A stretch of 63,596 nt of DNA, filler included, from Octopus bimaculoides (taxonomy: Eukaryota): the NCBI RefSeq assembly GCF_001194135.2. It is 6 parts of 6 records of this genome, joined end to end, with 100 filler letters (N's around TTAATTAATTAA, not from the genome) between each part and the next. Parts side by side here need not be neighbours in the genome. Positions count along the whole stretch, not along the records: positions 60,413 to 63,596 come from NC_069007.1; 5 more parts are not named here. One strand, written 5' to 3'. Every line of letters starts with the position of its first letter. The stretch's first letter is position 1. The notes under the pieces are model-generated. The model was not told where the DNA came from and did no database searches. It saw only the letters and a program-made list of their open reading frames with translations. Both the position numbers and the translations under genes were made by a program. Shown here piece after piece: positions 60,814 through 63,271 of the stretch.

Positions 60814-60897
60814 TTTTAGAACATTTAGCCTTAGATTCTGCAGGAGTACAGTGTCTTTCATCTTGTTTTCGATGGCAAACCACTTCATATTTAGGGT
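60814..60897 (-). CDS. Exon D of an unrecognised repeat-domain extracellular protein (84 nt, phase 1-1): (D)PKYEVVCHRKQDERHCTPAESKAKCSK
   Basis: Acceptor tttctttcgcacag|, donor A|gtaagt. Same length, phase and Cys spacing as exon A. Confidence 0.8.
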
Positions 60898-61329
60898 CTG
60901 TGCGAAAGAAAGATAAATAAATGTCGCCATTTCATGTACACACATTGAAGATGATCGATGGGGCTTAGCACTTTTCACCTTATTCTTTCTTATCTCCTGG
61001 AGATTCAAAGCTTCTTGCTGCAGACGTTATGTCACTTTACAAAGTCATCTCAACAGCAATGGTGTATCAGCTTTTTAACACTACTTCGGCTGCTCCTGTA
61101 CACTCCTACCTGTGATCAACGCTATTGTACTCCTTCTCTTAGAGAAAATCCTCCTGATCCTAAGACAGCACATCTTTAGTTAATTATATGAATAAGTCAG
61201 TGCGGTCGACATGGGAACAGTGATGGTCTAAATTCTGCAAATTGCATTGTAGACATCGTGAAACAAATCTTTGTCAAATTATCAGGTCATCCCATAAGTA
61301 CTCTCCGAATTTTGAATAAAGAAAACAAG

Positions 61330-61410
61330 TGATCAAGTAAACACTCGCAACGCCCGGTCTGGGAATCGAAACCGCGATCCTACGACCGCGAGTCCGCTGC
61401 CCTAACCATT
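61330..61410 (-). mobile_element. SINE family D head, intronic
   Basis: GGCGCAATGGCCCAATGGTTAGGGCAGCGG...GGTTTCGATTCCC tRNA-like head. Confidence 0.8.
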
Positions 61411-61481
61411 GGGCCATTGCGCCTCCACATGTATACATACAGAATACAGAATAACATGGGATAAGAAAGTTATTTGCTTAC

Positions 61482-61716
61482 CTTTCGGCATGATGCTGAC
61501 TGAATAGGAAGGATGGGAACAAGTTGAAAAGTTGTAGTTTGGTAGACTCTTAGAAAAGATGGTCAAGGTAAAGTTATCATATTTTGATTTTCTCGCAACA
61601 AATATTTTACCAGAATATCCATCTCTTGCAGATGTTTTGTAGTCGTGGTCAATTTCAATGGGATAACTGTTGTTAAAGGCACCATACACAGTGACCGCGG
61701 AACAGTGGGCTTTCAC
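61482..61716 (-). CDS. Exon C (235 nt, phase 0-1): VKAHCSAVTVYGAFNNSY...NFSTCSHPSYSVSIMPK
   Basis: Acceptor ctgttctgtccag|, donor AAG|gtaagc, 78 open codons, three N-X-S/T sites. Phases fit exons B and D. Confidence 0.8.
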
Positions 61717-61789
61717 CTGGACAGAACAGCAAAGATATAAGATACATGATGAACTTCGGACACTGGACAAACACATCCCCCCACCAATG

Positions 61790-62365
61790 TGCTGTCTTTT
61801 CCCCTGACAATATCCCTTCTGTCACCCTCAAACTTTATAGCCCCAAGCTTCCCAGTGATTTTATTGAATTCCCCAATATTTCTCTCTCAAAAGAAATCCT
61901 TCTCCATTTCTGGAAATACTATTTCTTTAGCCCCACCAATTATGGATTTATTTTCCACAATCCCACGAAATCAGAGTCAATCATTAATTATTCATCTTTT
62001 CCAGCTTCTCAAATCCTTCTCTCTCTTCGAGAGTTACCAATATAGTTTCTATGATAAACTTCATCTGTATCTCGTTTCTACCCAAGTTTACAGACCCACC
62101 AATCCCTCCTCTTCTCATCAGCCATTCTGGGCCTCACACTCACATTCCCCCAGTTAACACCTACACTCGGATCCTGTTTAAAGCATTAGAAATTCATCTT
62201 TTCCAGCATCTTAAAACTCACTCCCTCTTCAAGGGTTACCAATATGGTTTCTATTATCTGTATCTCGTTTCTACCCAAGTTTACAGATCCATCAATCTCT
62301 GCTCTTTTCATCAATCATTCCGGGCCTCACACTCAGTTAACCCCTATAATCGGATCCTATATCTA
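61790..62365 (+). mobile_element. Decayed CR1/Jockey-group RT fragment with an internal ~200-bp tandem duplication, intronic
   Basis: SPDNIPSVTLK...FWK and LFQHLKTHSLFKGYQYGF motifs. 61990-62181 is repeated at 62192-62365. Confidence 0.7.
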
Positions 62366-62504
62366 AAACAGACATAAACAGAATATGATTCATATGAATC
62401 TGACCAATTTCGGTGAGGCGTCGCGGTTTGTGGGCGTTGACCCTCACTCCTACCGTAAAATAAAAAAATGAAATGTAGTTGATGTTGAGGAACGATCGTC
62501 TTAC

Positions 62505-62626
62505 CAGAATAATACTTCCTGAGGAATGTGTACTGTTGCTAATCTCCAAAACCTGCTCTTGCACTTGGTTATTCTGGGGAATATTGTTATTAAACAACCG
62601 GCTGACGTTAGCAACAACAGGTGTCG
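62505..62626 (-). CDS. Exon B (122 nt, phase 1-0): (S)TPVVANVSRLFNNNIPQNNQVQEQVLEISNSTHSSGSIIL
   Basis: Acceptor ctctgtttgcag|, donor CTG|gtaaga. Phases fit exons A and C. Confidence 0.78.
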
Positions 62627-63187
62627 CTGCAAACAGAGTTCATATTTCATAATGAAGGCGAAAAATGACATACATATATCAGGTTGAGTAAAAAGCAAGC
62701 AACGTTTTGAACTATGAAGAATTTGTACCGGAGTTTTGCAGAGTTTTGAATTTTTTAAAAACATATTTTTTGAAATGTTAAATCTCTGAACGAGGTATTA
62801 ACAGTAACTGCACGACAAGGTGAAGTATATTTGCCACTTAAATGTGGCTGACCCCTAAGGGTGGATGTTACTGTTGCTTTTAGCCCCAGGAGAACATCTC
62901 CTCCAGCTGGCTATTGACACACATCTGTGTCATGTCTGTACGCTGACCATTTTACTACCAAGATCCTTATTTTATATCAGTGAAGCTTCCATGATCTCTA
63001 AGTCACTTCAACAAATTTTGATCTCAGCTCGAGGCCTTACCTTCAATGCCGCTTCTACTTACAGGCCTTCACAACGGTCTACAGAAGTAGATTATGAACT
63101 TGTGAACCTCTGGACTACGTGTGCTCGCCCGTAACAATACTGAAGGAGAAGGTGATGTTTAGGGGCTAAAAACATGTAAGTACTTAC

Positions 63188-63271
63188 AGTTGTAACATGC
63201 AGAGTCGAGTTGCTTTGCAGTACATGAGCTGTTGACCATTTTTACGATGCAAGCTGCTTCAATTCTGGGTG
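63188..63271 (-). CDS. Exon A (84 nt, phase 1-1): xPRIEAACIVKMVNSSCTAKQLDSACYN
   Basis: Acceptor ctttctctttcacag|, donor T|gtaagt. Paralogous to exon D. Confidence 0.8.

What the first reader, a model, noticed from the sequence alone, without database searches (positions are those of the whole stretch)
60814..63271. Hidden four-exon gene segment encoding an unrecognised ~147-aa tandem extracellular repeat
Seen: four minus-strand exons (63188-63271, 62505-62626, 61482-61716, 60814-60897) with strong GT-AG sites splice in phase (1-1, 1-0, 0-1, 1-1) into one open frame. The first and fourth exons are both 84 nt and share P2, E5 and Cys at positions 8, 17 and 26. This implies a repeating three-exon cassette of 441 nt (147 aa) with five Cys and several N-glycosylation sequons. 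The supplied ORF track shows it only in pieces. Inference: a secreted or cell-surface protein built by exon-cassette duplication, possibly lineage-specific. The unit length recalls molluscan VERL/ZP-N repeats, but I cannot match the Cys pattern to ZP-N or any other family.
Basis: partly seen in the sequence, partly recalled or inferred. Interest (0 to 1): 0.75.

Follow-up and report, generated by a model that had tools for sequence, protein, structure and literature searches.

The report
Octopus VWA surface-protein stalk repeat
The four exons are real and encode the tail-end stalk of an octopus cell-surface protein: the second copy of a 119-residue beta-sandwich domain that no domain library describes, flanked by two small three-cysteine linkers.

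Summary
Exons 63271-63188, 62626-62505, 61716-61482 and 60897-60814 (minus strand) have AG/GTAAG borders and splice into one open 174-codon frame.

The piece is collinear with Octopus bimaculoides chromosome CM046627.1 at 77-88% nucleotide identity. Predicted O. sinensis proteins use the same exon borders.

At the orthologous locus the gene reads: MIDAS-bearing VWA exon, then [122+235+84 nt] twice, then a last exon with a hydrophobic GPI-signal-like tail. The window holds linker 1, domain copy 2 and linker 2.

The 119-aa domain ("D") has no Pfam or PDB sequence match. AlphaFold models it confidently (pLDDT 82) as an eight-stranded jelly-roll sandwich. Foldseek finds no specific relative, and no ZP-N.

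An exhaustive profile search finds D plus linker only in molluscs. There it occurs mostly once per protein (twice in a Pinctada protein), between a VWA domain and CBM14 chitin-binding domains. Octopods duplicated it and replaced CBM14 with a GPI-like tail.

One surprise: the 235-nt exon is 72% identical to O. bimaculoides while its flanking introns are 88% identical.

The family is annotated but uncharacterised. Interest is moderate.

The parts
63188..63271 (-). Exon '84a' (84 nt, phase 1-1). It encodes the 28-aa three-Cys linker that closes repeat unit 1 (xPRIEAACIVKMVNSSCTAKQLDSACYN).
   Evidence: CAG acceptor and GTAAGT donor. It is 86% identical in amino acids to O. bimaculoides L001 8513-8596. 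The same exon is in the O. sinensis model at L002 6562-6642. dN/dS is 0.43.
62505..62626 (-). Exon 'e122' (122 nt, phase 1-0). It encodes the N-terminal 40 aa of domain copy D2, predicted to form the first two beta strands. It carries 2 N-glycosylation sequons, and a third spans the junction with exon 84a.
   Evidence: It is 62.5% identical in amino acids to the O. sinensis e122 exon at L002 7919-8038. Its O. bimaculoides counterpart lies in the N gap at L001 8869-9283. It aligns to the D profile.
61482..61716 (-). Exon 'e235' (235 nt, phase 0-1). It encodes the core 78 aa of D2, including the nearly invariant Cys pair (C73 and C134 of the spliced peptide).
   Evidence: tblastn to L001 9992-10219 gives E=7e-22. 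It is a D-profile member. The matching region of the AF2 model has pLDDT above 90. It is 72.4% identical in nucleotides against 88% for the flanking introns.
60814..60897 (-). Exon '84b' (84 nt, phase 1-1). It encodes the 28-aa three-Cys linker that closes repeat unit 2 (xPKYEVVCHRKQDERHCTPAESKAKCSK).
   Evidence: It is 77% identical in amino acids to L001 12047-12124. dN/dS is 0.33. In orthologues it is followed by the GPI-signal-like last exon, which lies beyond the piece edge.
62627..63187 (-). Intron between 84a and e122 (561 nt).
   Evidence: GT..AG borders. Partly alignable to L001.
61717..62504 (-). Intron that splits the D2 domain (788 nt). It contains a tandem duplication of about 200 nt at 61979-62344.
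   Evidence: Within the aligned block, the introns flanking e235 are 88% identical to L001.
60898..61481 (-). Intron between e235 and 84b (584 nt). It contains a SINE-like dispersed repeat at 61333-61439.
   Evidence: The repeat recurs in O. bimaculoides, O. sinensis and O. vulgaris loci.
63272..63596 (-). 3' end of the intron that follows the upstream D1 core exon. It includes ACC/ACT-rich low-complexity sequence and an (AACC)n run. It is not coding.
   Evidence: It is 84.5% identical to L001 8240-8764, which is intronic there. TRF result. In P0003, D1 joins 84a directly.
60413..60813 (-). 5' part of the last intron. The terminal exon, which carries the GPI-like tail, is expected about 0.4 kb beyond the piece edge.
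   Evidence: It aligns to L001 12131-12473. The L001 last exon is at about 12943-13059. No tail-like ORF lies in the piece.

Best explanation
The piece is the 3' part, minus the last exon, of an octopus gene for a secreted surface protein that is probably GPI-anchored.

The full architecture is read from the collinear O. bimaculoides locus and from O. sinensis paralogues. It is: signal peptide, a conserved N-terminal domain of about 150 aa, a VWA domain with a complete MIDAS motif, then D1, linker 84a, D2, linker 84b, and finally a short tail ending in a hydrophobic GPI-type signal.

D is a 119-aa eight-stranded jelly-roll beta-sandwich with one conserved Cys pair. It is always encoded by a 122/125-nt exon plus a 232/235-nt exon. 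Each linker is a 28-aa C-x8-C-x8-C module, predicted as a beta-hairpin plus a helix, on its own 84-nt exon. D plus linker is 441 nt and phase-1 symmetric, so the unit could be duplicated as an exon cassette. The window holds linker 84a, D2 and linker 84b.

The D+linker module is old. In gastropods, bivalves, cuttlefish and some octopus genes it sits, mostly once per protein (twice in a Pinctada protein), between the VWA domain and 1-4 CBM14 chitin-binding domains. In the octopod tandem cluster the CBM14 tail was replaced by a GPI-like signal and the cassette was copied.

Likely working (inferred, not shown): the MIDAS VWA head binds a protein or matrix ligand in a metal-dependent way. The glycosylated, disulfide-stapled D/linker units form a stalk that holds the head off the membrane. 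The D units may also bind glycans themselves. D2 is evolving unusually fast in predicted loops, which suggests it is also a recognition surface.
For: Shown:
- Open spliced frame and splice sites.
- Homology to Octopus proteins only in the first search.
- Collinearity with CM046627.1, introns included.
- Exon map and translation of the orthologous locus, with the DLVFVIDSSSS...T...TDG MIDAS motif, two cassettes, and the tail ...SITAWISAGLLLAWRLA*.
- Full-length paralogues P0003, P0005 and P0016 with signal peptide, VWA, 1-2 D units and hydrophobic C-termini.
- Identical exon borders in the O. sinensis model.
- 26 profile hits among 1.84 billion representatives. The ten looked up by name are all molluscan, and the CBM14 architecture holds outside the octopod cluster.
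- AF2 model with pLDDT 82.4 and pTM 0.70: D core above 90, linker as hairpin plus helix at 62-73.
- No Pfam or PDB sequence match, and no Foldseek hit at E<=1e-3.
- Linkers under purifying selection (dN/dS 0.33-0.43), but the D2 core exon at dN/dS 1.29 and 72% identity against 88% for its introns (Fisher p=8e-8). The changes cluster in two predicted loops.

Inferred: the GPI anchoring, the stalk role, the ligand binding and the glycan binding.
Against: - The VWA exon, the D1 copy and the tail exon are not in the window. Their presence in the source genome rests on collinearity with another species.
- GPI anchoring is judged by eye from the C-terminal sequence pattern. No predictor and no experiment was available.
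- No expression data were available. The supporting gene models are themselves predictions.
- The weak Foldseek resemblance to CBM, lectin and capsid jelly-rolls (TM 0.5 or less) does not establish glycan binding.
- The excess exon divergence rests on one pair of sequences. Synonymous divergence (dS 0.28) also exceeds intron divergence (about 0.13), so exon-limited gene conversion from a paralogue could contribute.
- P0001 shows a different order (D, 84b, 84a, D), so the cassette arrangement is not uniform, or that model is chimeric.
Confidence: 0.8

Rival explanations
1. The protein is a secreted matrix protein of the Pif/BMSP kind, not a membrane-anchored receptor. The product would be shed or secreted into a chitinous or cuticular matrix such as the stylet, beak, sucker lining or egg case. 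The hydrophobic C-terminus would be cleaved or irrelevant.
For: Non-octopod relatives carry 1-4 CBM14 chitin-binding domains after D+linker. VWA followed by CBM14 is the Pif/BMSP layout, and VWA domains of that family bind other matrix proteins (PMC11291548). Octopus also keeps CBM14-bearing members P0017 and P0033.
Against: The subfamily to which the window belongs has no CBM14 in P0002, P0003, P0005 or P0016. Those proteins end in a conserved hydrophobic tail typical of a GPI signal. No LamG domain or acidic low-complexity region was seen. In the cited phylogeny only one O. bimaculoides protein fell in the Pif/BMSP clade, and membership of this family was not tested.
Confidence: 0.2
2. One reading: a hidden, stand-alone, lineage-specific gene made of a long tandem array of 147-aa cassettes, VERL/ZP-N-like.
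For: The cassette structure and the lack of any family match are real. Argonauta hians P0018 has five D copies.
Against: Only two copies are seen at the orthologous locus, preceded by a VWA exon and followed by a tail exon. Relatives are annotated in three Octopus species. The module is mollusc-wide. There is no ZP hit by Pfam or Foldseek, and the fold and Cys pattern differ.
Confidence: 0.07
3. The segment is a decaying duplicate (pseudogene) in the tandem cluster. The high amino-acid divergence of D2 would reflect lost constraint.
For: dN/dS is about 1 for e235 and e122. The gene sits in a tandem cluster with fragmentary models.
Against: All four exons are open with intact consensus splice sites. 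Both linkers have dN/dS of 0.33-0.43. The D core keeps its nearly invariant residues, including both Cys. Lost constraint predicts exon divergence equal to intron divergence, not about twice as high.
Confidence: 0.06

Closest known systems
Octopus 'uncharacterized protein' family: O. sinensis LOC115230178 (P0003/P0004), LOC115230439 (P0005) and LOC115227258 (P0006); O. bimaculoides LOC106870158 (P0002) and LOC106879814 (P0001)
   Same: Same exon types and borders, the same D and linker sequences (52-86% amino-acid identity per exon), and the same order ...84a-D2-84b-tail. L001, which carries LOC106870158, is collinear with the window through its introns.
   Different: No retrieved locus is identical to the window, so the source species or paralogue is not pinned down. 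D2 is only 52-59% identical to any other copy. None of these proteins has a described function or a named domain apart from VWA.
Mollusc-wide VWA - D - linker - CBM14 proteins, for example Littorina saxatilis XP_070201851 (P0024), Haliotis asinina XP_067666686 (P0030), Pinctada imbricata KAK3106820 (P0029), Sepia pharaonis CAE1320622 (P0021) and O. bimaculoides LOC106878459 (P0033)
   Same: They share the N-terminal domain, the VWA domain, the D domain with its conserved Cys pair, and the C-x8-C-x(8-21)-C linker.
   Different: They end in 1-4 CBM14 chitin-binding domains rather than a GPI-like tail. D is single, or double in the Pinctada protein. D identity to the reference octopus copy (P0003 D1) is only about 21-32%.
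Pif/BMSP family of molluscan shell-matrix proteins (PMC11291548)
   Same: Secreted molluscan proteins with a VWA domain followed by CBM14 domains. [quoted passage not shown]
   Different: No LamG domain or acidic low-complexity region was seen here. The octopod branch has no CBM14. Clade membership by VWA phylogeny was not tested. The paper assigns only one O. bimaculoides protein to the family.
Capillary morphogenesis protein 2 / TEM8 type receptors (VWA head on a beta-sandwich stalk at the membrane). Named from general knowledge as a functional analogue only.
   Same: A MIDAS-bearing VWA domain held above the membrane by beta-sandwich domain(s).
   Different: In those receptors the stalk is Ig-like and the anchor is a transmembrane helix with a cytoplasmic tail. 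No sequence or fold match was found here.
ZP-N / VERL repeats
   Same: Molluscan, extracellular, Cys-containing repeats of roughly similar length. Possibly also fast evolution.
   Different: No Pfam Zona_pellucida hit. No ZP-N among the top 50 Foldseek matches listed. The predicted fold is an eight-stranded jelly-roll with one Cys pair plus a separate three-Cys linker.

Membership tests
Molluscan VWA-D-linker family (unnamed; defined here by the profile built from alignment A3, with A5 as the wider mollusc alignment) | The D domain aligns with the family profile across its 119 aa | tested here: met
   The window e122+e235 sequence aligns over its full length with 11 family copies. The e235 exon aligns in A4 and A5. 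The A3 profile recovers the family at E down to 2.7e-110.
Molluscan VWA-D-linker family (unnamed; defined here by the profile built from alignment A3, with A5 as the wider mollusc alignment) | The nearly invariant Cys pair and the A-T-D / Y-x-V-x-I core motifs of D | tested here: met
   C73 and C134 of the window peptide fall in the nearly invariant Cys columns. The core motifs VTVYG, KTSARDG and PSYSVSI are all present.
Molluscan VWA-D-linker family (unnamed; defined here by the profile built from alignment A3, with A5 as the wider mollusc alignment) | D is followed by a (V/I)-V-C-x8-C-...-C linker | tested here: met
   Exon 84b reads EVVCHRKQDERHCTPAESKAKC and exon 84a reads AACIVKMVNSSCTAKQLDSAC.
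Molluscan VWA-D-linker family (unnamed; defined here by the profile built from alignment A3, with A5 as the wider mollusc alignment) | A MIDAS VWA domain lies upstream in the same gene | not testable with these tools
   This region is outside the piece. It is present at the collinear O. bimaculoides locus (L001 5429-5986) and in P0003 and P0005.
Octopod GPI-tailed subfamily | A C-terminal exon with small residues followed by a hydrophobic stretch and then the stop codon | not testable with these tools
   By collinearity the last exon lies about 0.4 kb beyond the piece edge. No such ORF lies in 60413-60813. The tail is present in P0002, P0003, P0005, P0016, P0018 and P0023.
ZP-N / VERL repeat | A match to the Zona_pellucida/ZP-N sequence profile and the four-Cys Ig-like fold | tested here: not met
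   No Pfam hit at E<=10 and none in 25 family members. The AF2 model is a jelly-roll with one Cys pair. No ZP module is among the top 50 Foldseek matches listed.
Pif/BMSP shell-matrix family | The VWA domain falls inside the Pif/BMSP clade | not tested
   No Pif or BMSP sequences were on hand for a phylogeny. The paper places one O. bimaculoides protein (Ocbimv22007257m) in the clade.
Pif/BMSP shell-matrix family | CBM14 chitin-binding domain(s) downstream of VWA | tested here: not met
   Absent from P0005 by Pfam scan, and P0003 has only VWA families precomputed. Present in distant relatives P0021-P0033. The window itself has no CBM14.
Any Pfam-A family (2025 copy) | A score above the gathering threshold | tested here: not met
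   The best hit for the window peptide is SYNE1 at E=0.15, 12.8 bits against a cut-off of 27. No family is matched by more than 2 of the 25 D+linker sequences, and all scores are below cut-off.

The most novel reading that the evidence does not exclude
The D domain is a previously undescribed molluscan jelly-roll domain. In the octopod GPI-anchored VWA proteins it has become a rapidly diversifying recognition surface, for example for pathogens, gametes, or self/non-self or contact cues on the skin and suckers. The exon evolves about twice as fast as its own introns, as happens in immune and fertilisation proteins.
Probability: 0.15. Interest if true: 0.65.

Novelty: new variant of a known kind. 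Interest (0 to 1): 0.4.

Why it matters
The work defines the exon-level anatomy of a domain that current libraries miss. That domain sits in a mollusc-wide family of VWA plus chitin-binding extracellular proteins, which has the same general layout as the shell-matrix Pif/BMSP proteins.

It shows how shell-less octopods remodelled that family: cassette duplication, loss of the chitin-binding domains, and gain of a GPI-like tail.

It repairs a gene model in O. bimaculoides. LOC106870158 is truncated there because the 122-nt exon falls in an assembly gap.

It also flags one exon whose divergence exceeds that of its introns. That makes it a cheap candidate for a test of diversifying selection across octopod genomes.

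None of this overturns anything. The gene family is already annotated, although it is uncharacterised.

Tried and rejected
Exact substrings of returned proteins were accepted instead.
- The word-indexed homology search was insensitive. It returned only 2-4 Octopus hits for the peptide and for the D profile.
- PDB sequence searches with the D profile and with the N-terminal-domain profile found nothing meaningful.
- The first AF2 model used an octopus-only alignment of 15 rows. It was mediocre (pLDDT 66, linkers below 50). Adding mollusc-wide sequences raised it to 82.
- Foldseek against PDB gave only generic jelly-roll matches both times: lambda gpJ tip, picornavirus VP2, PliG, Pgp3 C-domain and CBMs. 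All had TM 0.5 or less and E of 2e-3 or more. I do not read any of these as homology.
- Weak Pfam hits (DUF7805, Peptidase_C33, RAG2_PHD) are below cut-off and inconsistent between members. I rejected them.
- I tried to pin down the source species by fetching O. sinensis and O. vulgaris cluster loci. No near-identical match turned up. P0001, P0003 and P0004 have no contig on record.
- A literature search for the LOC identifiers, and for octopus VWA/chitin-binding/sucker, found nothing.
- I considered PifS1, a Pif subfamily with a long insert between signal peptide and VWA. That insert is described as low-complexity, unlike the conserved globular N-domain here, so I make no assignment.
- ARAGORN and Rfam found no RNA gene in the piece.
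Full report

Yes. On the minus strand, 63271-63188 (84 nt), 62626-62505 (122 nt), 61716-61482 (235 nt) and 60897-60814 (84 nt) each follow a polypyrimidine tract and CAG, and each precedes GTAAG.

Joined, they give 525 nt with a single open frame of 174 aa: PRIEAACIVKMVNSSCTAKQLDSACYN S TPVV...SIIL VKAHC...IMPK D PKYEVVCHRKQDERHCTPAESKAKCSK. From the base composition of the piece, a stop-free run of 174 codons has a probability of about 1e-5.

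The two 84-nt exons share P, E and three Cys at the same spacing, and 7 of 27 residues overall. The peptide has 8 Cys and 7 N-x-S/T sequons.

**2. Where does it come from, and what is the whole gene?**

The peptide has no Pfam match. It does match two predicted Octopus bimaculoides proteins, P0001 at E=2.8e-69 and P0002 at E=4.1e-27.

The gene for P0002 lies on chromosome CM046627.1, fetched as locus L001. The window piece is collinear with L001 8240-12473, introns included, in three blocks of 77-85% identity. So the window is from an Octopus genome, and this is the orthologous or nearest paralogous locus.

I could not find an identical locus in the O. bimaculoides, O. sinensis or O. vulgaris stretches I fetched. 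The source species is therefore left open.

Mapping the exon types on L001 and translating them gives the gene plan:
- A 558-nt VWA exon at 5429-5986, reading DLVFVIDSSSS...T...LVTDGRSD, a complete MIDAS motif.
- e122' at 6999-7123 (125 nt).
- e235' at 7663-7894 (232 nt).
- 84a at 8511-8594.
- A run of N at 8869-9283.
- e235 at 9992-10223.
- 84b at 12047-12130.
- A last exon ending ...TTDGAVTNQLSITAWISAGLLLAWRLA*.

The N run sits exactly where the window's e122 exon belongs. That explains why NCBI's model P0002 starts at an internal Met of e235. The window supplies the missing exon.

All exon junctions are in phase 1 except the one inside D. Each [e122+e235+84] unit is 441 nt, or 147 aa. The window holds the linker of unit 1 (84a) and all of unit 2.

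By collinearity, the tail exon should lie about 0.4 kb beyond the piece edge. It is indeed absent from the piece.

A second homology search, using the reconstructed O. bimaculoides N-terminal part, found the family in O. sinensis and O. vulgaris:
- LOC115230178 (P0003/P0004) is VWA-D1-84a-D2-84b-tail.
- LOC115230439 (P0005) is signal peptide, a 150-aa N-domain, VWA, D1 and tail.
- LOC115227258 (P0006) is D-D-84a-D.

The O. sinensis contig for P0006 has 84a, e122 and e235 exons at the same borders. These gene models are predictions, not transcripts.

Several members end in a hydrophobic stretch with no charged residues after it, preceded by small residues. That is the usual look of a GPI-attachment signal. 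This is my reading of the sequence, not a predictor result.

**3. How far does the repeat reach, and is it a known domain?**

I built a profile of ten D copies (A3) and searched it exhaustively against 1.84 billion representative proteins. It gave 26 hits at E<=1e-3.

The ten hits I looked up by name are all molluscan: Octopus species, Argonauta hians, the cuttlefish Acanthosepion pharaonis, Littorina saxatilis, Haliotis asinina, Pinctada imbricata and Tegillarca granosa.

Outside the octopod cluster the layout is signal peptide, N-domain, VWA, D, a C-x8-C-x(8-21)-C linker, and then 1-4 CBM14 chitin-binding domains. Octopus keeps such members too (P0017, P0033).

D plus linker is therefore an old molluscan module. 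What is specific to octopods is its duplication and the replacement of CBM14 by a GPI-like tail. There are two copies here, three in P0006, and five in Argonauta P0018, which has shortened linkers.

D is not recognised by anything I could search:
- Pfam finds nothing on the window peptide or on 25 D+linker sequences.
- PDB sequences give nothing.

AlphaFold2 with an octopus-only alignment gave pLDDT 66. With the mollusc-wide alignment A5 it gave pLDDT 82.4 and pTM 0.70. The D core is mostly above 90, with eight main strands. The linker is a beta-hairpin plus a short helix at pLDDT 62-73.

Foldseek against PDB found no match at E<=1e-3 for either model. The best matches are generic eight-stranded jelly-rolls with TM 0.5 or less: lambda gpJ tip, picornavirus VP2, PliG, Pgp3 C-domain, the Kex2 P-domain, MAM and several CBMs. 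No ZP-N module appears among the top 50 matches listed. The VERL/ZP-N lead is not supported.

AlphaFold DB was not available, so 'undescribed' means not in Pfam 2025, in PDB, or in the papers I could search.

**4. Relation to known systems**

VWA followed by CBM14 is the layout of the Pif/BMSP shell-matrix family, whose VWA domain binds other matrix proteins (PMC11291548). That paper notes unexplained inserts between VWA and CBM14 in some subfamilies. It places a single O. bimaculoides protein in the family.

I did not test whether the VWA domain of the present family falls in that clade. The octopod branch lacks CBM14 and LamG. So I describe the resemblance but do not file the gene as a Pif/BMSP member.

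As a working analogy, from general knowledge, a MIDAS VWA head on a beta-sandwich stalk at the membrane recalls CMG2/TEM8-type receptors. There is no sequence or fold match to them.

**5. An unexpected feature**

Against O. bimaculoides, the introns flanking e235 are 88.0% identical (750 aligned nt). The exon itself is only 72.4% identical (232 nt). Fisher's exact test gives p=8e-8.

The 84-nt exons do not show this. 84a is 89% identical against 86.5% for its introns, and 84b is 80% against 78%.

Nei-Gojobori estimates:

| Exon | dN/dS |
|---|---|
| e235 | 1.29 |
| 84a | 0.43 |
| 84b | 0.33 |

Differences in e235 are clustered. The clusters are KIFVARKSKYDNFT versus KIIEIKNPKADRLI, and KSLPNYNFST versus ESRHHLSPPA. 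They fall mainly in two predicted loops, while the strand-forming stretches stay conserved.

Across species and paralogues, D1-type copies are 71-91% identical. D2-type copies are only 52-59% identical to the window.

Two readings remain open. One is diversifying selection on D2 loops. The other is exon-limited gene conversion from a divergent paralogue. The second is suggested because dS (0.28) also exceeds the intron distance (about 0.13). No donor with higher identity was seen, but the source genome's own paralogues were not available.

Simple pseudogene decay is unlikely. It would give exon divergence equal to intron divergence, and the frame, splice sites, linkers and core residues are all intact.

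**6. Verdict**

The segment is the stalk part (linker, D2, linker) of an octopus VWA surface protein from an annotated but uncharacterised tandem gene family.

The 147-aa unit is a jelly-roll domain not described in any library I could search, plus a three-Cys linker. It is of molluscan age and was duplicated in octopods.

Function is inferred, not shown: a MIDAS-dependent ligand-binding head on a glycosylated stalk, GPI-anchored. Novelty is moderate, a new domain family and a new architecture variant inside a known class of extracellular proteins. The accelerated exon is the most interesting lead.

Noticed in passing
window 61333-61439 (intron 3; same orientation as the gene): A dispersed repeat of about 105 nt with a tRNA-like head (box-A-like and box-B-like motifs, GGTTTCGATTCCC). 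It recurs at 87-97% identity in many places in the O. bimaculoides, O. sinensis and O. vulgaris loci I fetched, so it is probably an octopus SINE. ARAGORN and Rfam do not call it.
   Followed up: partly
window 61979-62344 (intron 2): A tandem duplication of about 200 nt, two copies at 81-87% identity. The same pair is present at the O. bimaculoides and O. sinensis loci, so it predates their split.
   Followed up: partly
window 62774-62940 (intron 1): A second dispersed repeat. It matches several places in the O. vulgaris cluster loci at 77-86% identity.
   Followed up: no
window 63382-63596: ACC/ACT-rich low-complexity sequence plus an (AACC)n run. It translates as a Thr/Asn-rich ORF (79 aa, 63353-63592, minus strand). 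It is conserved at 84.5% in O. bimaculoides, but it is intronic in the gene models. It is not an exon.
   Followed up: yes
L001 8869-9283 (O. bimaculoides CM046627.1): An assembly gap hides the 122-nt exon. NCBI model LOC106870158 (P0002, 138 aa) is therefore a truncated fragment starting at an internal Met. A 716-aa VWA model spans the same locus.
   Followed up: yes
window 61482-61716 versus L001 9992-10223: The exon is 72% identical while its flanking introns are 88% identical. Amino-acid changes cluster in two predicted loops. The cause is either diversifying selection or exon-limited gene conversion.
   Followed up: partly
Family proteins P0005, P0007, P0009, P0021-P0030, roughly residues 20-175: A conserved N-terminal domain of about 150 aa lies ahead of the VWA domain. 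It has invariant G-G-I-W, F..R and Cys positions (alignment A6). It has no Pfam hit and no PDB sequence hit. It is a second undescribed domain in the same family.
   Followed up: partly
P0001 (O. bimaculoides XP_014785007.1): This model joins D, 84b, 84a and D, so both linker types sit back to back, unlike every other member. It is either a real variant or a chimeric prediction from the old assembly. No contig is on record to check it.
   Followed up: no
P0018, P0020, P0023 (Argonauta hians): These argonaut relatives carry up to five D copies. Their linkers are short, single-Cys P-P-E-I-V-K-C-G stretches instead of the 28-aa linker. The VWA domain is degenerate (Pfam E=2.5e-5), and the tail is GPI-like.
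   Followed up: no
L001 22718-22831: Another e122-type exon lies about 10 kb downstream of the tail exon on the same strand. It probably marks the next gene in a tandem cluster. LOC106870155 (P0017, a CBM14-bearing member) is on the same chromosome.
   Followed up: no
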